A stretch of DNA of 64,000 nt from Mytilus trossulus (taxonomy: Eukaryota). The notes beneath the pieces were generated by a model that saw only the letters and a program-made list of their open reading frames with translations, had not been told where the DNA came from and made no database searches. Position numbers and translations under genes: made by a program. Location: NCBI RefSeq assembly GCF_036588685.1, contig NC_086377.1:7812001-7876000 (forward strand), given 5' to 3'. Of the stretch, positions 10,411 through 36,291 are shown piece after piece (position 1 is the stretch's first letter; each line of letters starts with the position of its first letter).

Positions 10411-10572
10411 GAAATAATTCCTTCGTATTATGCTCTATGCTCATTTTAACATGGGTAGGCCTTATATTTGACCACATTTTACACCTCGCTAACGTTCAGT
10501 GTAAAATATCGACAAATATAATGCCTACCCATGTTAAAATGAGCATAGAGCAAGACCTGAAGGATTTATTTC
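10411..10572. mobile_element. Palindromic (foldback) MITE downstream of the CARD-CC A stop codon
   Basis: The arm tgctctatgctcattttaacatgggtaggc is matched by its reverse complement gcctacccatgttaaaatgagcatagagca. Confidence 0.7.
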
Positions 10573-11784
10573 TTAGTTATTTTTGATAATTGGTCTCTAT
10601 TCTTTATTTGTTGCCCTCTTTTCTGCACCTTTTGCGTATTATTTTTTATTATTCAAAAATTCATACATACCTTCACCAATAATGTTGTTTAAGGAATTAC
10701 TGTTATATTTGTTTCTGTCTATGTTCAGTTTAATATATAGAGCTTGTTAATTACTTGAAAAATAAATGCCACTTCTTTGATGTTATTTCGAATATATGGT
10801 TTCTGTATACTTCCCCCTGTAATAATTGTTATATTAGGTACTTCATGTTAAGTGAAGGTCACATCCAGTCTCTTTTGATAGGTTTATGTAATATGTATGC
10901 ATATTCAAAAAAAAATTACTATATAATACTAAACATTCACATAGTTTCGAACAAGATACTAATAAAGAGCTTCTGTTGTATTGGTTTCTATGTACTTTTC
11001 CAAGGGCTAAAATGGCTTCTTCCGATTCCTCAAGGTCATTTACGGGTGATATTTATCAATGTTTCAACCAACAGTTTGCAAAAAAATAAATATGGCGTAA
11101 GCATGTACTATGTTGGTGAAATAATCAATTGACAATTGAATCATTTCAGGAACAATAACTCCTAAAAGATTTTATTGGATTGTTTTAAACTAATTGGATA
11201 ATATCTTCAGTCCAATGAGGAAAGCATTTGGTTCTTTGTAAATATATCTTTAAGAGTGTCACACGAGATCTCGGAACATTGAAAAGTCAAAACATACAAG
11301 ATGATATTATCCTTTTACCCTGACCTCAATTTCATTTTTATTAATTTTACCAGGATTTTACTCACCCTTCATGTGATATTTGACATAACTTTTGTCAAAT
11401 TCAGAAGGGGAAATAACTGTAATATGGAGTCTTCGAATTGATTTCGTTAAAATTTGTAAAACTTTTCTTTGGATAACGAGCAATAAGGTTAATTAAATAT
11501 GGCGCTTTCTTTTACGGTTACGGAAGAGATGTCAGAACAATGAAAAGTCAAAATTTAGAACTTGGTCAATATTTATATCACATATATCAAGCATGTACTG
11601 ATAATGTAAAGTGCATTATCGCTATTTTGTGCATTTTTCCATTGATCTTTTTTGTGATAATTTCATATCATGCTTCTCGCTTGAGATGGAAAAACTATCG
11701 CTAAAAAATAAGGAGGCCACGTGGCGTTGCTAACGAAATTGACATGAAATTGACAACGTCTTCATAGGTAAAAAAGCGATAAAC

Positions 11785-11883
11785 AGATTATCATTGGTCA
11801 TCTCAACTCGATTGCTTTTCTCACTTTCGCTGTACCAGCTCAAGCGAGAAAATCAATCTCGTTGAGATGATCAACGATAATCT
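11785..11883. repeat. Imperfect inverted repeat (foldback MITE-like)
   Basis: agattatcattggtcatctcaac ... gttgagatgatcaacgataatct. Confidence 0.6.
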
Positions 11884-14800: not shown

Positions 14801-14912
14801 GTAGTTTCACACAAGTTGTAGTAGAATTTTCGAAACACTTTGTTTACTTTAGTTTAGGTTTTAATTGTTGCAGAACGAAGTTGAAATCGAAGTGAAATTT
14901 GTTTTTTTCAAA

Positions 14913-17900
14913 ATGGATCCATGTCTGTCCAAGAAAATAACGAAAAATTGTGATTTTATCGAAAATAATCTCGTCCGCTTGTCTAAAGTTGTAGACAAAT
15001 TAATGGAAGATGAGATCCTAACACTTGTGGACAAGACAAACATTCTCTCAGCACCATCAAAGATGACTCAGATTAACATCTTACTGGAGAAGCTTATCAA
15101 TGTCGGCGGCACAGCCTTCACCTCTTTTGTAGAATCGTTGAATGCCACCGGAAACGAACGTATAGCAGATCAGATACTACAGACAGATTCGTCGGGTGAG
15201 TAAAAAAGCAACTGTTCTAAGTCAGCAATCTGATGTTCAGTAGTTGTTGTCTCTTTGTGTGGTTCATAAGTGTTTCTCGTTTCTAGTTTTTTGTTTAGAT
15301 CGTTGGTTTTCCCGTTTGAATGGTTTTACACGAGTAGTTGTTGGGCCCCTTTATAGCTTGCTGTTCAGTAAGAGCCTAAACTTCGTGTTGAATACCGTAT
15401 CTTAACCTACAATGGTTACATTTATATAATTGTTACTTGGGTACTAGTTAGTTGCCTCATTTGCACTTATATATCTATGTTAGAAGCAGCAATCAATCAC
15501 TGTATGTGTATGTGCCTGTTTTGGTCTCTTGTGGAGAGCTGTCTTATTGGCAATCATACCACATCCTCGGCTCTTTATATGACGGTTGTATTTGTAGTGA
15601 TTCTTGTTAAAATTCTTACAGTGACTTTGAGACGAAGAACAACAATAATGAAAGCGTTGTTCTTTTGCTTTTTTGGTGTTTTTTTTTTGTGAGTTTTTTT
15701 GCTGTTCATTTGTACATTCAAATTATTGCTTTTAATTGAGCTTATTTCAATTGTATCTTCATGTCAAGATGACAGAATCGTACAGCATATTTTCTCTATT
15801 TTCTCCTGCAATATTTTTTTTAACATTCATAGTAAATTATTATTGTGCGTTTTTGAATAATAAAAAAAAACAGCATATGATTGCATTGCATCTCTCAACC
15901 ATTGCTGGACTTCGGCTGTCATTTTAACTCTGTGCTCGGGTTCTTGTCTCTTTGATGCATTCCGTATATCCATTCTCTATTTCATATGTTATGTAAAAAA
16001 AAATGTAGAAAAAATATCGATCTTCTGAGAAATATTTGATATTAAACCATCGTTTATAAGATTATGTATTTCATATTGCAGAGGACACAGCCATGTCAAG
16101 AGAGGAGACTTCGTTCAGTGATAGCACGGTAAGTTGAATGATTACTATTATAGCAAGTTAGATGGCTCGTGAAAAGCGAAAAAAAACAACAAATTTAAGT
16201 ACATGTAACAATGATACCATTAACGTAAATACGAGACTTGGTGTCAATAAAAATCTTGTCTATATCTTATGAAGCATTAATGCTGTACTGCTCAGCCAAA
16301 GCGTAATTTTTTAGTATAAATTTGTATAATTGGTGTGTTGCTAATAATTTCAATATAGAGATGTATATAGTCTGACACATTCTGTCTAATAACCTTTTCT
16401 AAATAAAACAATCTCTTTATTCTTAATCGTTTCAAATTATAATGTATTGCCCGAAACGAAATTGTTAGGGTTGCTAGCTAGATTATAATATTTACCTTTT
16501 TAGTTCGAGTGCTAAAGTGTCACCCTTTCTTGATTAATTGTTTCAGTCTTGTTTTGCGTTTTTCGTTTATTTATACACAGATTAGATCGTTGGTTTTCCT
16601 GTTTGAATTGTTTTCAATTGCGATTTTGGGGCTCTCTATAGCTCTTTATAGCTTGCTGTGCGGTGTGAACCAAGAATCCGTGTTGAATATAAAAATGAAG
16701 ATGTGGTATGATTGTCAATGCGACAACTGTCCACAAGAGACCAAAATGACACAGACATAATCACATTAACAACTATATATAGGTAACCGTACGGCCAAAG
16801 CTCATACCGTATAGTCAGCTTTAAAAGGTCCCGATATAACAATGTAAAACAACGAAAAAACTAACGGCCTTATTAATGTACAACAAAATGAACGAAAAAC
16901 AAATATGTAACACTTAAAAAAAACCGACAACCACTAAATTACAGGCTTACTTTGACATATAAGTGTTTACTTTTTACACATTGAGACGTGGATGGAGAGT
17001 TGTCTCATTGGCACTCATACTACATCTTATTTCTATTGTAGACCTTTCAAAGGTTGAATTAATTATTAGCGAAATATATAAGAGGAAAATTCAAACGCAT
17101 TAATCGAAAAAAAAAAAACCAAAACAAAACGACAACACCATGGCTTAAAAAGAAAAGGACAAACAGACAAATACATGTATTAGTGCACAAGATACAACAT
17201 GGAAAACTTAAAACTTAGCAACAAGAACCCCCCTTAAAACTTAGGGTGATATCAGGTGCTCAGGAAGGGTAAACTTTTCGTCAAGGAATAACGCATTATT
17301 CATATCAAGGTGTTTTTTGTTACTTTTAGGCAGCAGCTTTCTAATACACAAAACATGAAAATATATTTATTTCAGTCTGGTGACTTCCGGGAAGACGAAA
17401 TACTCCATCTTTATAAAGAAAAGCAGATGTATAAAGTGAAGCTGTCTGACATGACAACTAACTACAAGCAGCTCCAGTCAGAACTGACCGTCAAGGAACA
17501 TAACATAGAATGTCTGAACAAAGAGATACACAAACTACAGATCGACCTTGAGGAGAACAGGAAGGGGTTGTTAGAGAACAGTTTCGACGCATTGGAAGGC
17601 GACATATTCCGCAGGATAAATACCGGTGCAAATACCAGGGAACTGATGAGAAAGGTATTGAAAATTCATCATTTATCGCGTCACGTGTTTGATGTCAAAT
17701 ATTTCCTATAATTGTAAAAAAACGAAATTCAAAGAAATAAATTTAGAAGAACACGTTATAATCACTACCATATATGAGTTTTCTGTTTTAATATAGAATA
17801 AATAGGTATGATACTTGCATAAAATATATAGCCTTTAATGAAATTTGATTGATTACCCAGTGAACAGATTTAAGCTGTGTAAAAAAAATATGAAGTTTTA

Positions 17901-19976
17901 TATGACTTTGTTTTCTTTGTTGCAGCAAATGAAAATTATTGGTTCGGCCGTCGTCATAAGGGATATGGGCTCATAGAATATAAAACACTGACTGGATATA
18001 CGATTTCTTATTTCCTTCGTTTTTGTCCTTAATTAACGACCCCCTCATTAACATACAATACACCCCTATTCCGGTTCACTTGAACCGCGTTCATCTTCAG
18101 TTTTAAAATGTCCGTCTTAAGTATTCGCATCTTTTACAAAAAACAATTTAATAGTCTTCGGTCTAAGGTTTCGTTATCTCATTATGGCATGTTTGATCTG
18201 TATTACTTCAAACATTCATTAATTTGCTCGGTTATTTAGAACAGTATGCGATATTTTACGAAAGAAGAACAACACAATATGTTGATGGTTAGTCGTGCAC
18301 CCTAATCTATCCTCTTGGCGACTGTCGAGCAGTGCGCCAGAATCTCAGGCTTATTGTGTATACGTATTTAGATGTAACCAATGAGACAATAACCCAACAA
18401 CAATCATTTTTATTCGCAAGTTAATCAAGTTACAAATTAAACGTGTGTTTCAGGTACGTGACCTACAGTTAGCGTTAGACGAAAAGGAGGAAAAGGTTAA
18501 CAACTTGCAAAAGGATTTAGATTACTACAGAAGCCAGCTCGACATTGTAGAAAAACAAGTTAAGAAACAGAAAGACGACAACAGTGAAAAGGATACTAGA
18601 ATAATGATACTTAGAAACCAGGTATTTACTAAATACAAGAGACGAAAGATACCAGACGGACAATCAAACTCATAAATCGAAAAAAAACTGCAAACGCTAT
18701 GACTAAAAATGAAAAAGACAAACAGGCACACAACAGCACACACGACACAACATAGAAAACTTTAGAATAAGCAACACGAAACCAACCAAAAAACTAGGGG
18801 TTATCTCAGGTGCTCCGGAAGGGTAAGCAGATCCTGCTTCACATGTGGCACCCGTCGTGTTGCTCATGTTATAAGTAATTCGATAAATAGTCTAATTCGG
18901 TAGTTCACATTCATAAAACGGGAAACGGATTGTAGTTACGACGTAAGGAACATATCCGATTTCATCTGTGATAGGGAAAGTACAAAACAAATTATCCTTT
19001 TCTTTTATAAAGCTCACATTGAATTGGCATGGCGTGAACAACGAAGAACAAAGACCTATAGACCTAATAGATATATCTACGTCATTTTGTAATCATACCA
19101 CATCTCCTTGGTTTATTTGCAAAAGGACAGACAATCATAATGGTCCACTTGTCTTTAATTTACGTGCACTGTCCAATCAAAAGAGACACAAGGACTATAG
19201 TACATACAGTACACTAATGCGACTTTCACAAGTGTTGTGAATGGTTGACAAAGTCGTTTTTTACAAACATTTGTTTTCTTATTTAACTGAAAATGATTGC
19301 ATTCTCTGTTTTACTTCTTTATATAGACGGGATGATTTGAAGCTTGATGTGTGATATAATGTAATGAGCATTTGACATGACACCGCTCCATTTCTACTTT
19401 AGTTTTCGCTATAATTGTTTTCAAAGGAGATTTAAATTGACTTTAAATAAATAGGTTTCCGAAGCATTTAAAAATATGAAAAATATTAAAAAACTACATG
19501 CAATGTAACTTTTCAACGAGGTAGTTTATTTCAATTTTAAAACAGTTAAATGCATGTACACAGAACACGAGAAATCACTTTTGCAACTCGTTTGTTACTC
19601 CTATCAAACTTTTTTTTCAACTTTTTAAAATTATTGCGTATTCTTATAGGTAGGGAAACTCCAGAACTACCTACAAGCCAGTAAACAGAACCTATCACGG
19701 ATCAATAACGAACAAAAACGCATAATGGACCAGTGGAATAAAGAACAGCTGGAACGCTTTAAAGAGATGGAAAACAAGATGGAGGGCGGGAAGAAAGACA
19801 ACTCCAAGCGATTTAATACACTGGAAGACAAGATAGATATCTTGATAAAGATGATGTCAGCGCAAGGACCTGCAATACCGAATCTGGTTAAGAGTGTTGA
19901 AAAAAGCAAACCTTCCGTAAAAAGTCATAAAGATGCGTATGGAAAAAAAGGAAAATCTAATCGATATAAGAACTAA
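14913..19976 (+). CDS. CARD + coiled-coil protein, paralogue B (5 exons, 367 aa)
   Basis: Exons 14913-15195, 16082-16128, 17376-17654, 18454-18621, 19650-19976 (phases 1,0,0,0; 1104 nt). CARD in exon 1 (LLEKLINVGGTAFTSFVESLNATGNERIADQIL). The exon 4/5 junction gives LRNQVGKLQNYLQA, matching LRNNVGKLQVHLQA in paralogue A. Confidence 0.85.
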
Positions 19977-20182
19977 ATCAAATATTGAAAAATCTTTCAA
20001 CCCTTAGGGATTTGTAAAGATGGTTTTCTTTTACTGAACTATTTTATAGTCGTCTTCTCTCCCTTTTTTTTACAGCTACAAATTCGTGTTCTCAACAATT
20101 GTAAGAAATATGACAATTGTACATGTATGTTATGTGTCGACAGTTTTCATCAAAACATTGCTAGTTTTGTTGAATTTTTTAT

Positions 20183-20460
20183 TACACCTACGATAGAAGG
20201 GGGCATTATGTTTTCCGGTCCGTTCGTCTGTTCGTCCGTTCGTCCATCCGTCTGTCCCGCTTCAGGTTAAAGTTTTTGTCAAGGTAGTTTTTGATCAAGT
20301 TGAAGTCCAATCGACTTCAAACTTAGGACACATGTTCCCTATGATATGATCTTTCTAATTTTAATGCCAAATTAGAGTTTTAACCCCAATGTCACGGTCC
20401 ACTGAACATGGGAAATGATAGTGCGAGTGGGGCATTCGTGTACTGGGGACACATTCTTGT
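20183..20460. mobile_element. Short Helentron-associated/Pearl-like element (other copies, reversed, at ~34655-34937 and ~41576-41793)
   Basis: Terminal hairpin-like motif, (GTCC/GTTC)n microsatellite and shared body ending ggacacattcttgtt. The three copies in this window are recognisably homologous. Confidence 0.6.
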
Positions 20461-21492
20461 TTATTAGTCTTTAACTAATAGTTAAAATTATGTCCTTTAT
20501 CAATAATAATAAAGATTAACTTACACATCTGTAATGTTTTTTTGTTGTTTTATTATCATTTTATTTTAGTGTTATCTAATGTTAGCCAAAAGTTGGCGGT
20601 CTTGGCTACATTTCTCTTCTTCAAATACCAACGTTTTTAGATGGTCTTGATTCACTTTTATATTTCAAATACTAGTTGCTTGAATTTTATCGGGAACCAG
20701 AAAAAGGAATGAGTTACCCGACGTCATAGAACTAAAGAATATTGTTCAGAGGCCAGTTGTATTGACGAAAGTAGAAGACCTTTATACGACGTATCTTACA
20801 TACATAAATATGCGTAATCTTCTACAGTTTTTGTCTGGCATATATCCTTGTTCTCATTTGTATAGTTGAGCGACTAAGAATTCAAGGCGTAAGCTAACGT
20901 GCATTAATCGATGTCAATATACTAATATAGGCACATATCTTGGTATCTAAAATTGAGAATGGAAATGGGGAATGTGTCAAAGAGACAACAACCCGACCAA
21001 ATAAAAAAACAACAGCAGAAGGTCACCAACAGGTCTTCAATGTAGCGAGAAATTCCCGCACCGGAGGCGTCCTTCAGCTGGCCCCTAAACAAATATATAC
21101 TAGTTTAGTGATAATGAACGCCATACTAATTTAAATTGTACACAATAAACTAAAATTAAAATAATACAAGACTTACAAAGGCCAGAGGCTCCTGACTTGG
21201 GACAGGCGCAAAAATGCAGCGGGGTTAAACATGTTTGTGAGATCTCAACCCTCCCCCTATACCTCTAACCAATGTAGAGATTTAAACGATCTACAATGTA
21301 TATGAAATATGATAATGTAAATAAATATAGTATACCTACCTGTCATAGTACTATTATTAGCAAAATATGGTCTCAAAATACAATAATTATGACCTTGGTA
21401 TACTATACATGTTTGTGCAATAAACCATGCAGTCTTGTTGTCTTCGGTTTCAAAAACGAAATTATATGTCGTCCGACCACCAGCAATCTAAA

Positions 21493-24400
21493 ATGGAACC
21501 CATAGAATCAAAATGCATAACGAAGAATTTATTATTTATCAAAGACAATATCACACAATTAGAGAAAATCATGGATAAACTTATAGAGGATGATTGTCTT
21601 GGAATGGACGAAAGAGCTGATATTTTGTCTGCCAAGAGGACAGATAAGCAATGTCATAAGCTTCTTGATATTTTACTAAAGCGAGGCGGTAATTCTTACA
21701 CATCATTCATAGAGGCTTTAGAAGTATCGGGGAATCATCACGTGGCTACGCGAATACAACATAAAGACTTACAGAAAGGTAAATTGAATATGTTTCCACT
21801 TAACTAACCTCAAACTGATCCTGATTATTTGTATATCGAAAGTACTATTTCGATATCTCAAGCCAGTAAAAAATGAAATTTGTCAATTCCGGAATGTCAA
21901 AGTTGTCGCGCACAATGTTTAATTTAAGATTCCTCTTGTCTAATTTTACGGATGTCGAAAAAAAAAGTTCACTATTTTTTATCATAAAAAGTCAGATTTG
22001 CCAATTCAAGAATGACAGATTCGCACCGCACAATGTTTAGTTTACTCAATTTGCATTGGTATCGCCATAATTCAAATGATTCTTCATATCTGTATATGTC
22101 CAGTTAATAAAACTACATATGTATGTGTTAGTTCTAAAACTAAGTAACTGCCAGAAGTAAGCTCTTATCTGATAAGGAAGGTCGTACGGTAGCATGTACG
22201 GATATACTTTTGTATTTGCTTAGATACTTTTTATATGAACTTTGGTGAATACTTGTCGCATTTGCAACCATACCACAAATCTGTATAGGTATATGCATGA
22301 AAAAGGCATATTATATTACTTTGCGTTATTTTTTTATCATTTCTGCAAGTTTTTTTTTTTTTTTTTTTTTACGTTAGAATTACGGCTTTGAATAGGACCA
22401 AGAACATAATAAAGCGGTGTTTTATAATGACTTGTATCCCCCCCCCCCCGATAAAAATCAAATGGTAGCTCCCTAACGTGTTCCACGCAAATAAAGAAAC
22501 TGTTTTTAGCGGTATTCTGGACTAGTTGTGACCCATCCATACAAGATTATTTCTGTGCAATGCTTTGGTATGTACCCTTCCTGTCTATCTGTTGTTAATA
22601 TGCCTTTTCTTATCCGAAATTTGTTTTCACATCATATTTTTATCTGACTTCATGCTCTTTTTTTCGTCAACCAGATGGATATTACATAAATGTCCAAGTC
22701 TTCAAGATTTATTTTGTAAAATGCAGTTGCGTTTTTAGATTCCGCAATTTTTAATAGGAACTCTTTCTGTTTTTACCAATATAATTTGTATTATTATATT
22801 GGTTTTTGTTTATAATAAACATTGTAAAATTACAATATTTATGTTACTATCTTTGTATTTTGAATTTTAAACTTATAATACTAATGAGATCGACCTGTCG
22901 ATTAAACAATTAAAAAGTAAAATAATTATGTGTATTGTATCATGCGTGCGTAGCACCATTGTTTGTAGATAATAGTTTAAAGTTAGTTTTCAATGTAAAT
23001 GAATTTAAATATATTTCTTTGTTTACACAATAATTGTAAAATCATCCACCGAACAAATTTAATGGATTTAAAATGGGTTTATTTTATTTTACATTGCAGC
23101 AGATGCATATCAACTTGCAGACGACACAAGCTTTTTGCACGTGAAAGAAGATACATTTACAGTTAATGGAAAGGTACATATGAAGTTATATGGACATTTT
23201 GACATATAGATACGCTCTAACATTGGCTGATATGAGGGCACTAGACTTTAAATTCAATAATTGAATTCAAATCTACGTCGAAATCAAAAACAAATACGAG
23301 CATATTTGAATTTAACAAGGAAACATCTCTTTAACATGAAAATTATCTCGGAAATAAATAGATAAATGAGAAAGTTAAGTCAAGTCAATAGCCTGAAATA
23401 TAAATAATCTGATTGAAATACGAACGTGTAGTTATCAAGTTTAATGAATGCATGAACCCACAGGAATAAGTCTCTAATCTATCTTCATTCACGTAGAAAC
23501 CATAAGATATAAGAAGCTGTCGTATATATAAGTGCATATGAGACAACTCTCTATCCAAGTCACAATTTGTAAAAATAAACCATTATAGGTCACACACTGA
23601 ACAGCAAACTATAAAGGGCCATACAAACTACTCGTGTAAAACCATTTCAACGGTCTGATCTATATGAAAAACGAGAACCACTGATGAACCACATCAACAA
23701 ACGACAACTACTGAACATCAGATTCCTAACTAAGGACAGGTGCAAACAATTGCAGCGGTTTAAACGTTTTAATGGTACCAAACCTTTTCCCTTATTTAAA
23801 ACAATAGTGTAACATCACAATGCCTACCTTTTATGAATTATATTTTAAGGTTGAGTTTGAAGAAGCTGAGGTGATCCAGCTCTATGAGGAAAAAGAAATG
23901 TATTTAGAAAGAGTCAAAGAACTGGAAGTCAGCTGTACGCTTTTACAGAATGAAAATTATCTGAAAGAACACAAAATTGACAAGCTGAATCAGGACGTAC
24001 GACTTTTAAAGCAAAATGTCCAACAGAAGTATGATGAGATAGACAATGTCGACGAGACATGCGTAGAACATCTCCGGAAGTTGGATCAAGTTGAGGCTCA
24101 GTGTAAAACGCTAGAGGAGGAAAACGCTCATTTAAAAATAGTTCAAAGAAATCTACAGGAAACTATCAGCGATAAAGAAGTTACAATGAAGAATTTGAAT
24201 CAAGAGAGAGAGTTTTATAAAAAGCAGATGAACATTCTTCAAACTGATCTGAGACAGTTACAGAATGAAAGTGCAGAAAAAGACGCAAGGATTCAAACAC
24301 TGAATGAGCAGATACGAGAACTTAAAATTGATCTTCAGAATACCCGCCAAGCCATGGACAAAGCGGCGACTGAATCACGCGTTGCTATGGAACAATTGAA

Positions 24401-24620
24401 AACCGATCATAGCAATCGATTTAATCAGCTAGACAATAAGCTCGATTGCGTCTTAAAAATGTTGAAAACAACAAAGATGGGTGATGGAAACGTTTTAAAA
24501 TCAGCAGATGTAAATAAGAATACAAGGAAACAAAGCATAGGGTCACACAAATCTGAGAATCGTCCGGGTACTAATGCTTCCAAAAATAAACCGGGTACCA
24601 ATCGTAATCAAAAGATTTAA
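21493..24620 (+). CDS. CARD + coiled-coil protein, paralogue C (3 exons, 376 aa; 385 aa if ATG 21466 is used)
   Basis: Exons 21493-21778, 23100-23173 (NAGNAG acceptor, 23103 is an alternative), 23850-24620; phases 1, 0. CARD: LLDILLKRGGNSYTSFIEALEVSGNHHVATRI. Micro-exon motif KEDTFTV matches EEDTFYV in A. The coiled coil ends RFNQLDNKLDCVLKML. Confidence 0.85.
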
Positions 24621-27241: not shown

Positions 27242-28687
27242 GATACAGTTAAGCCTTAACTAAACGAAATCAAATTAAAGTTAACATAGCCAAAGTGAGG
27301 CCTGGAATAAACTCATATTGAGACCGTCAGAATATGGCCTTCAGTGTCCTTTGGACGAAATTTGTAACTTGTTTTACTGTAGTTCGTTATGCATTTTGTA
27401 GTTCAATGTCTCAATGTCTATTGTTTGTTTTTCTCTTTTGTTTGTCTATATATATACACCTGATGCTGAATATCTCTTTTATTATGCATTGTTCTAGTGA
27501 CTGCTTTCCTTTGTAAAGTCCCATGGCGTTTTCAGATTGTCTTCAACTTATGAGTTTGAATGTGCATTTGGTATGTTCATCTCTCTTTTAACATATTAAA
27601 ATCACTTCAACAAGTTTAATAAGTTTTTAAGGGCCTTCCATATAAGGTTTTAATCAGTTATATTATTCATGCGCTTGTAAGACAACAAGAAAACGTAACC
27701 ACAAAGTAATTTAGCTTCGGTACTATAGAACTTGACCAATAGAAAAGTTTGAAGGAAGACATTTAGAAATTTGTACAAGAACGCAGTTGAGTTTAAAATA
27801 AGAAAATCGCAATAATAAGTGCAAGCAATAATTTCAGAATTTACAGTACTTTCATTGGTTTGATAAAAAAAAAAGTGTCCAATCAGAACGCGGTATTAGG
27901 TTCTTAAATATGAAAAGTTTTTGGAAAAAAACATCCCTTTTATGATTATAGTATCAAAAATAAAATCTTGAATTGATATAGACCTGTTTAGTTTCACCAG
28001 GTTTGTAAACTAATATTTCTTTGTTCTTTAGTAAGTTAAACATGTTTTTGAGTTTCATTGCTTTTATGAGTCAGAGCAAGCTTCTTAAAGTTAAAATTGT
28101 GAGAAAAAGTTTGAACTTGACATAATTTAAGTCAATTAAAGTATCGTGTATTGTGCTAGTACTCTGTGTATGGCAATGCATCTAACTTTTAAGTTTAGTT
28201 TGCTTTATATATGATGACTTCAGGTATTAGGGAGAATGTTGATAGAAAACGGATACACTAGAAATGTAAGCAATTGCCATACTTAATAGATGTAAAGGAA
28301 ATTTGACAAACATAATTGTCGTTGTAAATTATGCAGCCCGATAAAATTGTGTGCTTTTGAACTACACTGAAAGAACAAGTACGACTTGTGTTTAATTTTG
28401 TTGTCTCTGTTCGCTAGCCTAAGAATGTTTGTAACAATTATGGAAATTAAAGATTCAACCACGTTTTATTTTAACGCATGCTGATAATTTCTATTTTTTT
28501 TTAAATTTTAGATAATTTCAGCAGTTTATGGAATTTATCGAAATATTAAAAAAACTGTTACATTTTGATTGTACAATGAAACTGTTCCAATTGACACGTT
28601 TGTTACTCATTGTATTGTTTTACTATTTATGTTAATGGTTTTGATTATTTTTGGGTATGGCTCTTTATACTAAGTTATTTGTTTATT

Positions 28688-28800
28688 TTTATAATTTCAG
28701 AATGTGGCTATTACTGCTAATTTATTTTGTTATTATTTCAGGATGTGGCTATTACTGCTAATTTATTTTATTATTATTTCAGGATGTGGCTATTACTACT
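28688..28800 (+). repeat. 41-bp tandem triplication of a splice acceptor plus start codon (tttcag-R-ATGTGGCTATTACT)
   Basis: ATGs at 28702, 28743 and 28784, each one base after a ttcag acceptor. Confidence 0.9.
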
Positions 28801-31800
28801 GTACACTGTGTTTGTATCGATTCTTCCACTGTATAGTATACCAACAACCCCTCCTAAGCTTACAAGTATGTTTATATACCATCTAATTATTTTATTCTGA
28901 TAACTTTTTAAAAACTTCAAGCAGACAGCTAAACATCGACAAACACGAAAAGATAAGACATCTTTATTATACATGTAATAAAAAAATGGAGCTATTTTCT
29001 AAACTTTTACATTATTTTCAGTATTGGAATTTTCTTGTGTGTAAAAATAAGACACAATAAAGTGTAGTGACCAATGTTCGATTGTATGTATATAACATTT
29101 ATTAGAAGAAGAAAAATAGCACTCTGCAGTACACAAATAATAGAAATAACAGCAGAGGATTGGAAATACATGTTTCGGGACGTCGGAATTACATGACTGT
29201 ATACCTCTTTTGCGGGAATTCGGGAAAGATCCTTTATTTTTGCGGGCATTAAAATTTTACCATATCGGGATTCGGAAATCATTGCCGAATGAATTTTTCG
29301 GGAACCGGGAAAGATTTTTGTTTATGGAATTCGGGAATAAATGCCTCCAGTCGTCTCTCGACAGAGTAGTTTCCAGATTTTCAAAACTCCTAAAGGCATT
29401 TGGAATATACAAAACATGAGATGAATCATTAAGGGATCATTTTCAAACGCAACCTTACGGAGTGAGTCGAGTGTTATCGTTTTCTGCTATAAATGTATCA
29501 AAGGTCATACTCGGAAAACAAAATTACAACAAGAAACAAACAAAATCAGTTAAATGTTAATGTTGATGCCACTTTTCTGGTGTGATAAGGTTCTAGACCA
29601 CAAAAACAAGTCTCGTGATTAGTGACACAGATACAAGTCTAAATCTAGTTATGAGCGCATTACTGATAATCGAAGTAAACATGCGTGCGCGTTCACGTCG
29701 TTTTCAATTTTAAGTTTCTTAAAATAAGAATAAGATAATTTGATGAGTATATAACATAAATGGTTACTCATTCTAAATATAATTATAGACTGTGAGAAGA
29801 TGGCAGACGGAACCCCAGGAATTATATCGAAGGTAACCATCTATAATATAAAACTATCGACCTATAATACAGCTGTCGGTACCGTCGCCAAAGTCAGTTG
29901 TCTGGATGACGCATTGGTAGTGAGTGGAGCTGATACTCTAACATGTCTTCCAAATGGTCGATGGAGTAGTGCCAAACCCACATGTAAAGGTAAGTTTGAA
30001 AATGCAATTGAAAACATTCACACCTTGAAACAAATACAAAATAAAATTAAAAACCAATTGTTCAGAGAACCATTGATGGTCTTTCCACCAGTAAGAATCT
30101 TTTTTTATATGAAAATATTAAAATTTGGTTTTAAATGTCAATTGTACCGTCAAATGACAGCTTATTGAACGCTGATCCCCAAAATGTATGTTTTCTATGG
30201 AAAAAGATATAGTTAAGGGAGATAATTGTTTACTTCCGGTTCAAACGATGTTATTTCCGGTATAGTTTGATAGTTTAAGTGACACTGATTCCAAAAATAT
30301 ATGGTTCTATATACTTTTACATTTATTTAGAACAAAAAATAGCTACTTCCGGTAAACAAAAGGTCACTTCCGGTTGGCTTTTACAAGGTCACATTGCTTG
30401 CAACTCATTGCAAAAGGTCCCATGTCTTTATCATGTATACATATGAGGTAAAAGCAAAGGTCAAAATCTAGAACGTTAATTTTGCCTATGACCTTGAGCT
30501 CAATTTCAAGGTCAACAACCAAGGACCTCAAATCAAAAGACCCTAGGTTCCTCTACTGTATATTGTTAATGAGTAATATTACCATACAACTAATATAAGA
30601 TATAAAAGGGGAAAAACTCGCATCAAATGTTTACGTACCCTTTTAACTAAAATTTACGTGTTACGACATGTCGCAACTCACAATTGTATGAAAATATTTT
30701 GTCGATATCTTATATGATTGCTGAAAATAAGTGATAACAAGCCAAAATCAAAATTTAGAATTTGACCTTGACCTTTGACCCTGACCTCATCTTCATTTTT
30801 TTGGACCAAGGATCTTAAATCAAAAGACCCTAGACCTCTATCACTTATGGTTTTCCAGTTTTAAATACATTTCAAAATTTCAAATACAAAAGGGCAAATA
30901 ACTCTCATATGGAATCTCTATACGGCTTCGGTCAAAATAAAACAGAACATCCTGAGGATATAACGAGCAATTTGGAAAAATAAATTTGTCTGTTTCTTAT
31001 ACGGTTGCGAAGCCTTAGAGATAACAAGAAAAACAGTGTTCGGGGAGATAACTCTTATTTGGGAAAGTATTCGGTTAAGCAGAGTTGGTTTCAAAAGCGT
31101 ATAAACTGTTCGATATCATATTAAAAAAATCTAAGCGACATCTTGCGAAACAAAAAAACAGCGAAGGAAAAAATTAGGCGGAAGAAAAAAAAAAAAAAAT
31201 AATAATAATCAGAAGAAATCCAATAGGTCTTTCCACGGAAAAGTGGAAAGACCTAATAAGAAAAACAAAGCTTGAAAAAAAGAGCAAAAAATGTACGAAA
31301 GCACTATTCTAATCGCCTATTCCAATTAGAAAAGAAAACGAGACTGATGTTCTGTATGTTCTGTTTACGAACTCTCTCTTAATATCACCAAATCACAATG
31401 CCTTTTATGTAATCCCTTCATGTGATTAAGCGATAGAAATGTGATCAGGCGCGGATCCAGGGGGAAGGGGCGGGGTTTGGAACCCCCATTTTTTTTGCCG
31501 ATTTAAGCATTTGAAAGGGGGCCCTGAACAAGTTGGAACCCCTTTGGCTGGATTCGCCCTTTTTTCGACTGGCAGTGAAAACCCTGGTCAGTGGTCGTCC
31601 GTTTGACTGTGCGAGTTGACACGGCCAAGTCCGTTCACAATTTATACATCTTCGGATTTCAAATGTTTGGCTTTGATCGTTCCTGATGAAGGTGAATCCA
31701 TAAAAGCGCTTCGGACGCAATAAATTATAAAACGTGTTGTTTTCCATTTTTTAAGCGTTGAATACGACCCCCGGTTAAGAGAGATTGACTAAATCTCTGC

Positions 31801-34800
31801 ATATAAAGACCACTTGAAACAACTTTTTGATTGGCCTGTGAGTGACCTTTTTTCGCATTGAAACGGGGGTCACTTTCAAAATTTAGGCGTTGAATACGAT
31901 CCCCGAGTAGACAGATTGCCTCGATCTCTGCATGTAAAAACCACTTGAAACAACTTTTTTATTGGCATGTAAGTGACCTGTTTCAATGCAAAATTGCTTT
32001 CCTTATCTAAGCAACCCATCCTATTGAAAAATATCAAAACTGGGAATGAAACGACGTCTATATTGAAGCATAGGGTAAACTTAAATGCAACTTTATTTTC
32101 TACAGAACCAGAGATAGTAAAGCCGAAAGACTACAAGCTGATCATTGGACTCTCGGTGGGAGGGGCGTGTCTTGTTCTTGTCGTCATAATTACTGGTATC
32201 ATAGTCAGGAACAGACAACAAACCAAACAATTACCTTCAGAGCAAACAGACAAAAGGTAATTATTTACAGTCCTAACACCCATTAAAGACATATACAATG
32301 CATATTTTAAAAGTTTTATGCATATGAATAAGAATATTTATCTAACTAAAAACAATTTTTGCTGGCGTACTAAATTATAATCCTGGTACCTTTGATAACT
32401 ATTTGATGGGCAAAATGACAGGCGAAATATACCGAAGAAATATCCAAAAGCCAAAGTCGAAAACAAACCGAAGTTTCCGTGTAAAAAATCACATACATGT
32501 ACATTAACAATTATTCACAACAAAGAAAACCAAAGACTGAACGACACGAACATCATAAAAAACAACAAAAAATGCAATTTAACATGCAAATTAACAAACA
32601 AAAAAAAAACACCATATAACAAGCAGGACAAATAAGCAATGTTACAGAGTAAACATAGCATATGAAAAACGAAACGAAAACAAGGTCAGAACTAAAGATG
32701 TTTTAATACACGGTAGGGGGAAGAATCATTTCTTTATCCCGGACCACAATCTCGAATACTTGAGAAAAAAACTTAAGTGGTGCTATTACTGAAACATCTG
32801 CCCTTATAGAGATAAACATATAGATATTGATGTCGAATCTACATATCTATGTAAACAAGAAATGTTCAGGTATTTGTGTGACGTATCATACTGACTGATA
32901 TACACGAAAGAATGTTTTATCATTTGACAATGGTGTCTTTATCAGTAAAGATTAACATGTTCACTAGATGTAAATATTGGGGACTTATATTTGAAGTGGA
33001 CGAATTATTTCCCTGTTTGTACCGCCAGATGTACTTCTGAAATAAATATCAGTGTTGGGGTTACTAGATATAGCTATATATAGGAATATGTGGTGTGAGT
33101 GCCAATGAGATAACCCTCCTACCAACACTATCAAATAATTAAAAAAAACTTAACAGTTATACATTGTATCCTATTCTTATCAATATATTGAAATGCTATA
33201 AGTGTTTTTTTGTTGTTTTTTTAGTCTGTATTTTGGGCATTTTTCCTAATTTGTTTCAAATAGTGTAAATGAATTGTAAGCATTGAGTCATCCTCTCAAA
33301 TGATCTCTTAGTATATATGAAAATGTTTCTATGGTCTTTTGATAGTCTCGAGTGGTAGATTTGAAATGAAGAGTTCCAGAATGACACAAATATACATATA
33401 AGAAGATGAGGTATGAGTGCCAATGAGACAAATTTCCACCCAAGTCACAAATTTTAAGAGAAAACACAATATGTATTTATATGCGGTATGCAAACAAACT
33501 TATAAATAGGGCCGTATTTTCCCCATTTGAATTGTTCAAATACATTCGTCATTTCGGGGCCTTTTATAGCTGATTATGCAGTTTTGGCTTTTATTATTGT
33601 TGAAGGCCGTACGGTGTCTGTGTCATGTGGTCTATAGTGGAGAGTTAGTTGTCTCATTTGAAATTATACCACTGTTATGTATCTGTATTGTATGGTCGTA
33701 TGTGTTTTGTAGTTCAGTCGTGTGAGTCGTGTCCCTTTGAATGATGATGATGCATGTTATGTCTATTTAAAATAAACATGCTATGGTAATAAATGTGTTG
33801 TTATTGCTCTTAAACAAATATAACTTTAGCGTCCATGTACGGAATATGGTGGAGAACTTCAAAACGACCCCTTTGATCTTCTTTTTTTTTATATCTGATT
33901 GTGTTTTCCATGTAGACTGAATGCAGGCAACAGACAGAAAACATACTCAGCAGAAATGCAAACAAGATACACGGAACAAGAAACGAATCTCGAAAATCAA
34001 CCGTAAGATTCACTTTCATGTGTTGTTATACATATACTAATTATAGTTTGTCCATTTAGTACACCCATCCTTTCAAATTTAATGCCGTTCTTGTTGTTTT
34101 AAGATATGACATACACATATTGTAATAGAAATAACAACGGAAACTTTTCATTACTGACGTGAATGGTTATGAAAATTAACAGAAAGACCAAGGATTCCAA
34201 GACAAACAATGAACAGCATGGGTAAAATAAAAAAAAAAACAGCAAAACGACAAGAAAACTAATAACAAAACTCTACACAGAAACTGAAGACTACAGGTGC
34301 GGTCAGGTGATCCAGAGGGTTGATCAGTTTCTGTTCCATTTCATGTAGTCAAGAGATAACTTTGACGTCCAATGGCTGTTTTGAAAGACACCAGTCGTGT
34401 TAAATGACATAACCTAGCCATAACCCTTCATTTTTTAATAAGGCCGTTAGTTTTCTTGTTTGAATTGTTTTACATCATTTCGGGGCCTTTAATAGCTGAC
34501 TATGAGGTATTGGCTTAGCTCATTGTTGAAGGCCGTATAGTTGTTAAATTCTGTGTCATTTTAGTCTATTGTGGACAGTTGTCTCATTGGCAATCATACC
34601 ACATCTTCTTTTTTATATACAGCAAATTGGATAAATGAAAAAAATAAAAAAAAACGAGAATGTGTCCATAGTACACGGATGCCCCACTCGAACTATTATT
34701 TTCTATGTTCAGTGGACCGTAAAGTTGGAATGAAAACTCTACTTTGCATTTAAATGAGAAAGATCATATCATAGGGAACATGTGTACTAAGTTTCTAGTT

Positions 34801-36291
34801 AATTGGACTTCAACTTCATCAAAGACTACCTTGACCAAAAAGTTTAACCTGAACAGGACAGACGGACGGACGAACGAACAGACTCACAGATCATAAAACC
34901 GTGATAATGCCTCTCTACTATCGTAGGTAGGGCATAAAAATGACACAAAATTATACACAGAAACTGAAGATGTAAAAACCAGTCACTTTAACGTTAGAAA
35001 ATGTATTAACACACATATAAAATTACATAACTATTGTATTGAATTCTTTTAATTGTATTTACAGACATGTTTATAAAGTATGGTCACAAGATAGATCGTT
35101 GAGAAAGTTTATAACTGCATTCGATTTGATCGACTTAAAACAAAAAGGTAATCTATAATTATGATTTTATTGAAACCATTTTGTATCCCCACAGATCTCT
35201 CACTTTTATTTTATCTAATGTACAGATGATAGGTCACTTGGCCCTCTGGATCATTTAATCCTTTATCTAATCTTAAGTTCCTCGATTTTTATAACGTTTA
35301 TCCAAAGTGTGTATTAAGTTCATTTTTAAATAATTTAAATGTGAATACATCATTGAAGAGAAATTAATATTCTGCATGGGACAATGTTGTCAGAACCACA
35401 AAAAACAAGGCTGAAAGAATATCAAATACTGTGGATTCATTATTATTTGTTGAATACCAATTTCGTGGGTTTCGTTGTTACACATGAACTACGAAGTCAA
35501 ATGGTAAACGAATAATATAGTTTCAAGAGGCTTTGCGTACATTATTGGAATTGGGATTGGCAAAATCACGAAATCAAATGTTAACGAACATTCAAGTTTT
35601 CAGCAATCCACAAAATTTGATACCCGCGGAAAAAAATGAATCCACAGTATGAATGTGTTTCAGAAATTTATGATAAACACAAAATCAAATATGCATGAAA
35701 ATACAAATTTCTGAATCCCGAAAAAGTGAAAAAAGTACCTATGCAAATAAACGAATCTACTAACGGTGTCCTATAGTTGTTAATTTCTGTTTAATTTGGT
35801 CACTTGTGGTGAGTTGTCTTATTGGCCTCATACCACATATTCTCTTTTGAATCTACCAAGTTCAGTAAAATTGAGAATGGAAATGAGGAATGTGTCAAAG
35901 AGACAACAACCCGACTATAGTAAAAACTACAGCAGAAGGTCACCAACAGGTGTTCAATGTAGCGAGAAATTCCCGCACCCGTAGACGTCCTTCAGCTGGC
36001 TTCTAAACAAATATATACTAGTAAACTGTTAAACCAATTTCATGTGATTTATTTTCAGCTAGTAAAGTGTTTGATGTAACACATGCCTATATAGTCCTAG
36101 AGGATGACGGTACAGAGATAGATGATACTACAGCATTAGAAGCCTGTAAAGATAAAACACTACAGGTCCTGTCAAAACATCAGTCATGGACTAGAAACTC
36201 CTACTCCTCAAACGGAAGCGAGGTTATGCTGGATTTAAGAGGTGGTGACAATTCAAGTACTTGTGGAACAATTAAAAGCTTCCGTTTATAA
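28784..36291 (+). CDS. Type I membrane protein: signal peptide - Sushi/CCP - TM - cytoplasmic CIDE-N domain (6 coding exons, 278 aa; alternative last exon possible)
   Basis: Exons 28784-28865, 29789-29989, 32106-32256, 33916-34002, 35065-35147, 36059-36291; phases 1,1,2,2,1 all compatible; 837 nt open. Signal peptide MWLLLLYTVFVSILPLYS. Sushi C..GTVAKVSC..VSGADTLTCLPNGRWSSAKPTC. TM LIIGLSVGGACLVLVVIITGIIV followed by RNR. CIDE-N PHVYKVWSQDRSLRKFITAFDLIDLKQKASKVFDVTHAYIVLEDDGTEIDDTTALEACKDKTLQVLSKHQSW. Confidence 0.8.
30078..31256. mobile_element. Helentron-like non-autonomous element in intron 2 of the Sushi-TM-CIDE-N gene
   Basis: Subterminal motif ggtctttccac at ~30078 is repeated at the 3' end inside the hairpin ggtctttccacggaaaagtggaaagacc (~31226-31253); internal tgacct/aggtca repeats. 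Confidence 0.55.
35065..36190 (+). other. CIDE-N domain-coding exons (exons 5-6 of the Sushi-TM-CIDE-N gene)
   Basis: Matches the CIDE-N pattern: (F/Y)KV..DR..RK.I.A..L..L..K, then (I/L)VLE(E/D)DGT.(I/V)D, then L.VL...QSW. Confidence 0.85.
35427..35649. mobile_element. TA-flanked MITE (second copy at 46077-46289)
   Basis: TIRs tactgtggattcatt / aatgaatccacagta in both copies, with homologous internal sequence. Confidence 0.75.

What the first reader, a model, noticed from the sequence alone, without database searches (positions are those of the whole stretch)
28784..36291. A single-pass surface receptor with an extracellular Sushi/CCP domain and a cytoplasmic CIDE-N domain
Seen: six exons join with canonical GT-AG sites and matching phases (1,1,2,2,1) into one 278-aa ORF: signal peptide, complete 4-Cys Sushi domain, 23-aa TM with an RNR stop-transfer, ~45-aa linker, then a complete CIDE-N. 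Three of the six exons are not in the ORF track in their coding frame, so the fusion is invisible without splicing. Known: CIDE-N occurs in DFF40/CAD, DFF45/ICAD, CIDEA/B/C and Drosophila DREPs, none of which is a type I surface receptor, and it oligomerises head-to-tail into helical filaments. Sushi domains mediate complement-type and cell-surface recognition. Inference: this may be an undescribed receptor class using CIDE-N as its signalling or polymerisation module, as TIR or death domains are used. It could nucleate CIDE filaments or bind and sequester DFF40/DFF45, linking extracellular recognition to DNA fragmentation or cell death.
Basis: partly seen in the sequence, partly recalled or inferred. 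Interest (0 to 1): 0.92.

Follow-up and report, generated by a model that had tools for sequence, protein, structure and literature searches.

The report
Mussel membrane protein with Sushi and CIDE-N
A real, expressed mussel gene encodes a single-pass membrane protein with a complement-type Sushi domain outside and a CIDE-N domain (known only from soluble cell-death and lipid-droplet proteins) inside; it is the shortest member of an uncharacterised family found in mussels, scallops and oysters.

Summary
The six exons, GT-AG sites and phases 1,1,2,2,1 are as described. RNA-derived contigs from four runs show joints 29989/32106, 32256/33916 and 34002/35065. One 844-nt contig links the Sushi, TM, linker and first CIDE-N exons.

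All six exon translations are exact pieces of RefSeq XP_063438461.1, an "uncharacterized protein" of 278 aa from Mytilus trossulus. The model is therefore already in databases, but it is unnamed.

Pfam finds Sushi and CIDE-N above cut-off. An AF2 model matches solved CIDE-N domains (TM 0.83-0.86).

The gene is not an isolated fusion. Collinear relatives occur in Mytilus, scallops and oysters, with signal peptide, one or two Sushi(-like) modules, a TM segment and usually three CIDE-N domains. CIDE-N is the best conserved part (74% against 20-55% elsewhere in a distant ortholog) and keeps a basic and an acidic half.

The searchable literature holds no description of this architecture.

Function is inferred. 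The most likely role of the cytoplasmic CIDE-N is a clustering-dependent, head-to-tail homotypic assembly module. A link to DFF40/DFF45, both present in the genome, is untested. Surface location is also untested. A homodimer prediction gave no verdict.

The parts
28682..28797 (.). A 41-bp tandem repeat (2.9 copies) whose last copy holds the start codon. The two upstream copies carry out-of-frame ATGs at 28702 and 28743.
   Evidence: Tandem Repeats Finder; ATG and frame listing. The transcription start was not determined.
28784..28865 (+). Exon 1: ATG and a hydrophobic N-terminal signal-like segment (aa 1-27). Donor GTATGT, ends in phase 1.
   Evidence: It is an exact piece of P0017 at residue 1. 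Kyte-Doolittle gives 1.97 over residues 1-21. It was not covered by read laying, but it is present in 948- and 986-nt contigs that encode the full ORF.
29789..29989 (+). Exon 2: one complete Sushi/CCP module (4 Cys and the Trp) on a symmetrical phase 1-1 exon.
   Evidence: Pfam PF00084 at 31.2 bits against a cut-off of 20.7. PDB sequence hits to CR1, C2 and beta2-GPI. Joint 29989/32106 seen in X1, X3, X5 and X8.
32106..32256 (+). Exon 3: short stalk, 23-aa TM helix (LIIGLSVGGACLVLVVIITGIIV, glycine-rich first half), RNRQQTK stop-transfer and the start of the linker. Ends in phase 2.
   Evidence: AF2 helix at 104-135. Joints on both sides seen in RNA contigs.
33916..34002 (+). Exon 4: polar cytoplasmic linker, predicted to be disordered.
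   Evidence: pLDDT below 50 over residues 135-170. Joints 32256/33916 and 34002/35065 seen in X1, X3 and X5.
35065..35147 (+). Exon 5: N-terminal, basic half of CIDE-N (VYKVWSQDRSLRKF...LKQK). Ends in phase 1.
   Evidence: Pfam CIDE-N profile positions 3-28. Residues 174-206 hold 7 K+R against 3 D+E. Spliced to exon 4 in RNA contigs.
36059..36291 (+). Exon 6: C-terminal, acidic half of CIDE-N (IVLEDDGTEIDD...SW), a 32-aa tail ending GTIKSFRL, and the TAA stop.
   Evidence: Pfam CIDE-N profile positions 38-76. 99% identical to residues 203-278 of P0001 and an exact piece of P0017. The AF2 CIDE-N (175-240, pLDDT 79-89) superposes on FSP27, DREP3, DREP2 and DREP4 CIDE domains.

Best explanation
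This is Mytilus trossulus LOC134719385, an expressed six-exon gene for a 278-aa type I membrane protein. One Sushi/CCP module faces the outside or the lumen. It is followed by a single TM helix with a glycine-rich first half, a disordered linker, and one complete cytoplasmic CIDE-N domain. It is the shortest member of a family found in mussels, scallops and oysters, whose typical members have the same N-terminal layout followed by three CIDE-N domains. All of this is shown.

The rest is inferred. CIDE-N is a homotypic interaction module that polymerises head-to-tail through a basic and an acidic face, and it does so as a function of local concentration. When the ectodomains are brought together by a ligand or by contact, the cytoplasmic CIDE-N domains should therefore assemble with each other. 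They could also co-assemble with the three-CIDE-N paralogs or with other CIDE-N proteins of the cell, including the DFF45/DFF40 orthologs. On this reading the protein works like a death-domain or TIR receptor, with CIDE-N as the assembly module. With only one CIDE-N, the short form may act as a co-receptor, nucleator or cap of mixed assemblies.
For: - Architecture and splicing.
- Identity with RefSeq XP_063438461.1, and orthologs in M. edulis and M. galloprovincialis.
- Both domains score above the Pfam cut-offs.
- CIDE-N fold: TM-score 0.83-0.86 (on target length) and rmsd 1.3-1.5 A to 4mac, 7v6e and 4d2k.
- The layout is homologous, not a chance fusion. P0017 aligns collinearly from signal peptide to CIDE-N 1 with the 681-aa P0003 (E 5e-24).
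- Sushi + CIDE-N recur in P0003, P0006 (Argopecten), P0009/P0038 (Mytilus) and P0048. P0046 (Mytilus) has a Sushi hit below the cut-off (18.7 bits).
- P0047 (Mizuhopecten) and P0041/P0042 (Ostrea, Saccostrea) have a Cys-rich ectodomain + TM + CIDE-N domains but no Pfam Sushi hit at E <= 0.01.
- CIDE-N is the most conserved segment: 97-100% within Mytilus and 74% to the distant ortholog P0037, against 20-55% for the other segments.
- Charge is bipolar: 7 K+R against 3 D+E in residues 174-206, and 3 against 9 in residues 207-246.
- E216, D218, G219, E221 and R184 are invariant across the family alignment.
- The head-to-tail, charge-driven and concentration-dependent assembly of CIDE domains is published (PMC8647176).
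- DFF40 and DFF45 genes exist in the same genome.
Against: - There are no data on localisation, ligand, oligomeric state or partners.
- The homodimer prediction of residues 170-250 scored 0.00, which is no verdict.
- No soluble multi-CIDE-N adaptor was found. The one candidate, P0008, is a mis-modelled copy of a TM paralog.
- A single CCP module is a weak basis for calling the protein a pattern or ligand receptor.
- The protein could reside in internal membranes.
Confidence: 0.6

Rival explanations
1. The protein is a membrane tether or adhesion organiser, not a signalling receptor. CIDEA/B/C concentrate at lipid-droplet contact sites, where their CIDE-N domains pair. In the same way, the cytoplasmic CIDE-N (one here, three in the paralogs) would cluster the protein into patches or tie membranes and vesicles together on their cytosolic faces. 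The Sushi module would mediate adhesion or matrix contact.
For: The closest solved relatives by sequence and fold are the CIDE-N domains of FSP27/CIDE-3, CIDE-B and CIDE-A, which are membrane- and droplet-associated proteins. The glycine-rich TM half is conserved across the family. The C-termini are conserved within the short forms, and the long forms end in aromatic residues, which could be docking motifs.
Against: There is no CIDE-C region; the tail after CIDE-N is 32 aa and disordered. Nothing links the family to lipid droplets. Sushi + TM proteins are usually found at the cell surface.
Confidence: 0.17
2. The protein is a decoy or anchor for the DNA-fragmentation machinery. Its single cytoplasmic CIDE-N would bind the CIDE-N of DFF40/CAD or DFF45/ICAD and hold it at a membrane, damping or timing apoptotic DNA cleavage without any ligand-driven step.
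For: DFF40 (C12:504507-510711) and DFF45 (C12:14184074-14187512) are present in the genome. CIDE-N domains form heterotypic pairs such as CAD-ICAD (PDB 1f2r and 1ibx are among the fold hits). A single domain suits a capping role.
Against: The domain is nearer to the CIDE and DREP types (25-33% identity) than to CAD or ICAD (21%) in the fold search. The family norm of three CIDE-N domains plus a conserved ectodomain is more than a decoy needs. No interaction was tested.
Confidence: 0.1
3. The model is an artefact: a chimeric gene model or read-through joining a Sushi-TM gene to a separate CIDE-N gene.
For: An older M. galloprovincialis annotation splits the locus into two models (VDI39637.1 of 145 aa and VDI39638.1 of 144 aa), and a newer one gives only 120 aa.
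Against: Spliced contigs from four runs, labelled as three organisms plus a gut metatranscriptome, join the exons, and one contig carries exons 2 to 5. Full ORFs sit on contigs of 948 and 986 nt. The same collinear layout is conserved in distant bivalves.
Confidence: 0.02

Closest known systems
CIDE-N (CAD) domain proteins: DFF40/CAD, DFF45/ICAD, CIDEA/B/C (FSP27), Drosophila DREP1-4
   Same: The cytoplasmic domain is a full CIDE-N by Pfam (46.7 bits). By fold it matches FSP27 4mac (TM 0.83, 32% identity) and DREP3 7v6e (TM 0.86). It has the basic N-terminal half and the acidic (L)E(D/E)DGTE(I/V)DD motif that these proteins use for head-to-tail assembly (PMC8647176).
   Different: All of the known proteins lack a signal peptide and an ectodomain. 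This protein has no DFF40 nuclease domain, no DFF-C domain and no CIDE-C region. Its CIDE-N lies behind a signal peptide, a Sushi module and a TM helix. In the paralogs it is repeated three times.
Receptors that signal through homotypic assembly domains (death receptors with DD, Toll-like/IL-1 receptors with TIR)
   Same: Same logic of layout: an extracellular recognition module, a single TM helix, and a cytoplasmic domain of a type that forms open-ended homotypic assemblies.
   Different: The fold is unrelated; CIDE-N is a ubiquitin-like alpha/beta roll. No adaptor or effector is known. This is a functional analogy only and was not tested.
Single-pass Sushi/CCP membrane proteins (CD46/MCP, CR1/CR2, IL-15R-alpha-like, SEZ6/CSMD)
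   Same: An N-terminal signal, CCP module(s) on phase 1-1 exons, a short stalk and one TM helix. The best sequence hits of the ectodomain are CR1, CR2, C2, beta2-GPI and MCP.
   Different: There is only one CCP here. In the searches made here, CIDE-N turned up only in bivalve proteins and never in these named families. There is no evidence of complement-type ligands in this protein.
Long bivalve paralogs and orthologs (e.g. M. edulis P0038, M. coruscus CAC5401758.1, Argopecten XP_069102870.1, Ostrea LOC125650241)
   Same: Collinear homology from the signal peptide through Sushi, the glycine-rich TM and CIDE-N 1. The intron splits CIDE-N 1 at about the same place. Most of the family copies located in this genome lie on contig C5.
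   Different: They carry three CIDE-N domains, the third lacking the acidic EDGT motif, and long low-complexity tails. The window's protein stops 32 aa after CIDE-N 1.

Membership tests
CIDE-N domain (Pfam PF02017) | Profile HMM score above the curated cut-off over the whole domain | tested here: met
   46.7 bits against a cut-off of 23.5, covering profile positions 3-76 at residues 176-246 of P0001. In the window the two halves fall on exons 5 and 6.
CIDE-N domain (Pfam PF02017) | Alpha/beta roll fold that superposes on solved CIDE-N domains | tested here: met
   AF2 pLDDT is 79-89 over residues 175-240. Foldseek gives 4mac TM 0.83 with rmsd 1.4, 7v6e TM 0.86 and 4d2k TM 0.84.
CIDE-N domain (Pfam PF02017) | Oppositely charged basic and acidic faces used for head-to-tail contacts | tested here: met
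   At sequence level only. K178, R184, R187, K188, K199, K201 and K204 stand against E216, D217, D218, E221, D223 and D224. The acidic motif is invariant in the family. The mapping to DREP3 K122, K132, K145, K149 and D162-E170 (PMC8647176) is by motif register, not by a printed alignment.
CIDE-N domain (Pfam PF02017) | Homotypic or heterotypic oligomerisation | tested here: inconclusive
   Complex prediction on two copies of residues 170-250 gave no verdict. This needs biochemistry.
DFF40/CAD and DFF45/ICAD | C-terminal nuclease domain (PF09230) or DFF-C domain (PF09033) after the CIDE-N | tested here: not met
   Only Sushi and CIDE-N are found in the protein. The true DFF40 and DFF45 genes lie on contig C12.
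Vertebrate CIDEA/B/C | CIDE-C region following the CIDE-N; no signal peptide or ectodomain | tested here: not met
   Only 32 disordered residues follow the CIDE-N. The CIDE-C region is reported from vertebrates only (PMC2426694).
Sushi/CCP/SCR domain (Pfam PF00084) | Profile score above cut-off, four Cys and the conserved Trp | tested here: met
   31.2 bits on exon 2 and 25.9 bits on P0001, against a cut-off of 20.7. C29, C65, C80, C93 and W86 are nearly invariant in the family.
Type I single-pass membrane (surface) receptor | Cleavable N-terminal signal, one TM helix, N-out/C-in topology | tested here: met
   By hydropathy and model only. The hydrophobic stretches are residues 1-21 and 103-131 (TM span taken as 104-126), RNR follows the TM, and the disulfide-bonded domain lies N-terminal to it. 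No SignalP or DeepTMHMM was available.
Type I single-pass membrane (surface) receptor | Located at the plasma membrane, binds a ligand and transmits a signal | not testable with these tools
   No localisation, ligand or signalling data.

The most novel reading that the evidence does not exclude
In bivalves CIDE-N serves as a receptor-proximal assembly domain, a further class beside DD, TIR, CARD and PYD. Clustering of Sushi-TM-CIDE-N receptors would nucleate CIDE filaments at the membrane. These would recruit or release the DFF45/DFF40 pair or other CIDE-N proteins, coupling extracellular recognition directly to DNA fragmentation or to an immune or cell-death response. The single-CIDE-N form encoded here would tune that assembly.
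Probability: 0.2. Interest if true: 0.85.

Novelty: new variant of a known kind. Interest (0 to 1): 0.66.

Why it matters
CIDE-N domains are known as modules of soluble or droplet-bound proteins acting in apoptotic DNA cleavage and lipid storage. Their filament-forming behaviour has been compared with that of death-fold signalling platforms. No receptor that uses CIDE-N has been described, however.

The family found here is conserved and expressed, with CIDE-N as its best-kept part. That gives a concrete and testable case of CIDE-N placed directly under a membrane and behind an extracellular recognition module.

If the domain assembles on clustering, it would add a new module to the set of receptor-proximal assembly domains. 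It would also open a route from the cell surface to CAD/ICAD-type effectors in an animal group known for large, shuffled immune and apoptosis gene sets.

If it does not, the family still needs a name. The RefSeq and UniProt entries are all 'uncharacterized' or 'Sushi domain-containing'.

Tried and rejected
- **Homodimer prediction.** Complex prediction on two copies of residues 170-250 scored 0.00 and gave no verdict. It is not used for or against binding.
- **ESM Atlas.** The search of P0017 gave only generic Sushi clusters at 0.75-0.77, below any useful level.
- **Exon 5 against PDB.** The 27-aa piece gave no hit. As a result, the residue-by-residue mapping of the basic face to DREP3 rests on motif register.
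- **Spurious hits.** P0007 and P0012 from the representative search are bacterial WD40 or repeat proteins.
- **Soluble adaptor idea.** P0008 looked like a soluble multi-CIDE-N adaptor. It is 90% identical to the cytoplasmic part of the TM protein P0049 and has a different, probably mis-modelled N-terminus, so the idea was dropped.
- **Limits of the search for homologous proteins.** Its word filter missed known family members (one search did not return P0003 or P0006). The taxonomic range given is therefore a lower bound.
- **Joined protein not built.** Exons were searched one by one by reference. Whole-protein steps used the database proteins P0001 and P0017, whose pieces match the exons exactly.
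Full report
**1. The observation**

The window is AT-rich eukaryotic DNA (GC about 0.33) with no N. Reading the six proposed exons on the + strand gives:

| Exon | Coordinates | Length (nt) |
|---|---|---|
| E1 | 28784-28865 | 82 |
| E2 | 29789-29989 | 201 |
| E3 | 32106-32256 | 151 |
| E4 | 33916-34002 | 87 |
| E5 | 35065-35147 | 83 |
| E6 | 36059-36291 | 233, ending in TAA |

Every intron begins with GT and ends with a pyrimidine-rich tract plus AG. The phases are 1,1,2,2,1, the split codons read N, E, R, P and A, and the total is 837 nt.

I searched the exons one at a time and by reference, and made no joined sequence. E2 is a Sushi module (31.2 bits against a cut-off of 20.7). E5 covers CIDE-N profile positions 3-28 and E6 covers positions 38-76.

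**2. Transcription and splicing**

I laid the contigs of four public runs on window 29700-35699, which is 6000 letters as allowed. One run is on record as RNA-seq and the others were guessed to be RNA. Three exact GT..AG joints appear:

- 29989/32106 in all four runs
- 32256/33916 in X1, X3 and X5, with a variant in X8
- 34002/35065 in X1, X3 and X5

In X1 the three joints share the depth (6.16) of one 844-nt contig, and the listed pieces of that contig cover E2 and E3. The Sushi, TM, linker and first CIDE-N exons therefore sit on one spliced molecule. Intron bins are either empty or flooded by high-copy repeats.

E1 and the E5/E6 joint lay outside the stretch that could be laid. They are supported by the continuity of the CIDE-N profile across E5 and E6. 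They are also supported by two public contigs of 948 and 986 nt that encode the whole 277-278-aa ORF (P0001, P0019). Contigs of that size cannot be genomic copies of a 7.5-kb gene.

**3. Identity**

A whole-library HMMER search with the E6 translation returned a 278-aa protein, P0001, at 99% identity. Its 90% cluster holds:

- XP_063438461.1, 'uncharacterized protein LOC134719385' of Mytilus trossulus (P0017)
- XP_071140952.1 of M. edulis
- fragmentary or split models of M. galloprovincialis: VDI39637.1 (Sushi part, 145 aa), VDI39638.1 (144 aa) and XP_076082049.1 (120 aa)

All six exon translations are exact, ordered substrings of P0017. From here on I used P0017 and P0001 as references for the whole protein.

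**4. Domains and fold**

On the whole protein, Pfam gives CIDE-N at 46.7 bits (residues 176-246, profile 3-76) and Sushi at 25.9 bits. PDB sequence search hits complement CCP proteins with the N-terminal part. With the C-terminal part it hits the CIDE-N domains of CIDE-3/FSP27, CIDE-B, CIDE-A and DREP3.

An AF2 model built on a 12-sequence family alignment shows:

- an N-terminal helix at residues 2-16
- beta strands at 48-94 (pLDDT about 76-80)
- a long helix at 104-135
- disorder at 135-170
- a beta-beta-alpha-beta-alpha-beta unit at 175-240 (pLDDT 79-89)
- a disordered tail

Foldseek places the C-terminal unit on FSP27 (4mac, TM 0.83, rmsd 1.4 A, 32% identity), DREP3 (7v6e, TM 0.86), DREP2 and DREP4. 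CAD and ICAD come further down the list.

Hydropathy finds two hydrophobic stretches, residues 1-21 and 103-131; I take the TM span as 104-126, and it is followed by RNRQQTK. The topology, with Sushi outside or lumenal and CIDE-N cytoplasmic, follows from these features and from the disulfide-bonded nature of CCP modules. It was not measured.

**5. A family, not a one-off**

The same search and two word-indexed searches found relatives with the same order of parts.

| Group | Proteins | Ectodomain | CIDE-N |
|---|---|---|---|
| Mytilus | P0009/P0038 (471-491 aa) | two Sushi-type modules (one Pfam hit; Cys pattern) | three |
| Mytilus | P0048/P0049 (465-497 aa) | Sushi | three |
| Mytilus | P0045/P0046 (751-752 aa) | Sushi (P0046: 18.7 bits, below the cut-off) | three |
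| Scallops | Argopecten XP_069102870.1 (598 aa); Mizuhopecten LOC110462036 (623 aa) | Sushi by Pfam in Argopecten; no Pfam hit at E <= 0.01 in Mizuhopecten | three |
| Oysters | Ostrea LOC125650241 (504 aa); Saccostrea LOC134258405 (527 aa) | Sushi-like by Cys/Trp pattern, below Pfam E 0.01 | three |
| Unknown origin | P0003 (681 aa) | Sushi | three |
| Unknown origin | P0050 | a different Cys-rich ectodomain | three |

All have a TM segment between the ectodomain and the CIDE-N domains.

P0017 aligns collinearly with P0003 from residue 3 to residue 246, which runs from the signal peptide through Sushi, TM and linker to CIDE-N 1 (31% identity, E 5e-24). It aligns more weakly to repeats 2 and 3. 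The fusion is therefore old and shared. The window's protein is the short form, ending 32 residues after the first CIDE-N.

P0037 (285 aa, 53% identity) finds only the window's own gene in this genome, so it is an ortholog from a more distant species. In the own genome a long paralog lies at C5:33058478-33068310 and another at C5:58797312-58804443.

**6. Signs of function**

Against the distant ortholog P0037, identity by segment is:

| Segment | Identity |
|---|---|
| CIDE-N | 74% |
| Sushi | 55% |
| TM | 52% |
| Tail | 47% |
| Linker | 45% |
| Signal peptide | 33% |
| Stalk | 20% |

Within Mytilus the CIDE-N is 97-100% identical, while the signal peptide, Sushi and linker vary.

The domain is charge-bipolar. 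Residues 174-206 hold 7 K+R and 3 D+E, and residues 207-246 hold 3 and 9. R184, E216, D218, G219 and E221 are invariant in the family alignment.

These are the features that published CIDE structures use for salt-sensitive, concentration-dependent head-to-tail filaments (DREP3: K122, K132, K145 and K149 against D162, D165, D167, D168 and E170; PMC8647176). My mapping to those residues is by motif register only.

The genome also holds one DFF40/CAD gene (CIDE-N plus PF09230 exons at C12:504507-510711) and one DFF45/ICAD gene (CIDE-N plus PF09033 at C12:14184074-14187512). Possible CIDE-N partners therefore exist.

**7. Most likely mechanism**

Shown: this is an expressed, conserved type-I-like membrane protein with a CCP module on one side of the membrane and a CIDE-N domain on the other.

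Inferred: the CIDE-N acts as a homotypic assembly module. Its polymerisation would be driven by local concentration, that is, by clustering of the ectodomains or by TM association through the conserved glycine-rich half of the helix. It may co-assemble with the three-CIDE-N paralogs or with DFF45/DFF40.

This works like a DD or TIR receptor, but it is not a member of those families.

I hold two rivals: a structural tether or cluster organiser in the manner of CIDE proteins at droplet contacts, and a membrane anchor or decoy for CAD/ICAD. An artefactual gene model is excluded.

The single attempt to predict a CIDE-N homodimer gave no verdict and is not counted either way.

**8. Comparison with what is known, and novelty**

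Published CIDE-N proteins (DFF40, DFF45, CIDEA/B/C, DREP1-4) have no signal peptide, ectodomain or TM helix of this kind (domain schemes in PMC8647176; the evolutionary survey PMC2426694 lists only counts of mollusc ESTs).

Full-text searches gave nothing relevant. 'CIDE-N' with 'Sushi' returned two unrelated papers. 'CIDE-N' with Crassostrea returned only the 2008 survey. The wider searches with transmembrane, mollusc, Mytilus, oyster and bivalve terms, and with 'domain architectures', added none.

The proteins themselves are in RefSeq and UniProt as 'uncharacterized' or 'Sushi domain-containing'. The sequences are therefore not new, but the architecture is undescribed. I rate it a new variant of a known kind: the CIDE-N domain in a new membrane-receptor-like setting, conserved across at least mussels, scallops and oysters.

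**9. Limits**

- No signal-peptide or TM predictor was available beyond hydropathy and AF2.
- The taxonomic range is a lower bound, because the word-indexed search misses members.
- The transcription start is unknown. The ATG sits in the third copy of a 41-bp tandem repeat whose upstream copies carry out-of-frame ATGs.

**10. Earlier notes of this scan**

Notes s1-827460 and s1-827241 flagged three CARD + coiled-coil genes directly upstream on the same strand. I confirmed the three CARD hits (23.3, 29.4 and 39.4 bits). I did not test any functional link to this gene.

Noticed in passing
window 7170-24620 (+): Three CARD-bearing ORFs lie directly upstream of the Sushi-TM-CIDE-N gene on the same strand (7170-7529, 14865-15203 and 21427-21807; Pfam CARD at 23.3, 29.4 and 39.4 bits). 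Long coiled-coil ORFs follow the first and third (9285-10004, 23820-24620), and a shorter ORF (17310-17711, not scanned) follows the second. Together they form a small cluster of homotypic-assembly-domain genes.
   Followed up: partly
window 28682-28797: The start codon lies in the last copy of a 41-bp tandem repeat (2.9 copies, 93% matches). The upstream copies carry the same ATGTGGCTATTACTGCT start in other frames (ATG at 28702 and 28743). These would act as upstream ORFs if they are transcribed.
   Followed up: partly
window 32300-32499, 32900-33699, 34300-35099, 35300-35699 (introns): RNA contigs pile up on these intron stretches at depths of thousands to hundreds of thousands, with many 'goes back' and loose-end joints. 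These are high-copy, transcribed repeats, not exons of this gene.
   Followed up: no
alignment A1 (P0003, P0006, P0009, P0010), third CIDE-N repeat: In the long paralogs, CIDE-N repeats 1 and 2 keep the LE(E/x)DGT(E)IDD acidic motif. Repeat 3 keeps the basic YKVWSKD..K start but has NEDVVISDD or NDDVPIFDN in place of EDGT. It may be a one-faced domain that caps a head-to-tail chain.
   Followed up: no
P0017 residues 104-116 and the family TM segments: The outer half of the TM helix is glycine-rich in all members (IIGLSVGGA, YIGGGLGGG, IIGGSAGGG, IIGGTLAGC). This GxxxG-like pattern suggests helix-helix association in the membrane.
   Followed up: no
C-termini of P0017, P0037, P0002, P0004 and of the long forms: The short forms end in a conserved (F/C)GT(I/V/L)(K/R)S(F/Y/S)(R/H)L. 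The long forms end in SDV(L/Y)(F/Y), (N/D)TYF, S(Y/F)(R/H)A or SVYSA. These conserved C-terminal peptides could be docking (PDZ-type) motifs.
   Followed up: no
G000 contig C5 (7.84, 12.0, 33.06, 52.0, 58.80, 72.4, 86.0 Mb): The short gene, two long paralogs and several further CIDE-N hits all lie on the same contig, C5. The DFF40 and DFF45 genes are on C12.
   Followed up: partly
G000 C6:59295287-59295439, C10:71715354-71715506, C11:25618499-25618651 (L003-L005): Three CIDE-N matches have identical score (49.9 bits), identical profile range and one TAA inside each. They look like dispersed copies of one broken or intron-split CIDE-N exon, perhaps carried by a repeat.
   Followed up: no
M. galloprovincialis entries VDI39637.1, VDI39638.1, XP_076082049.1: The ortholog is split into a Sushi half and a CIDE-N half in one annotation and is cut to 120 aa in another. 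This hides the architecture in that species.
   Followed up: no
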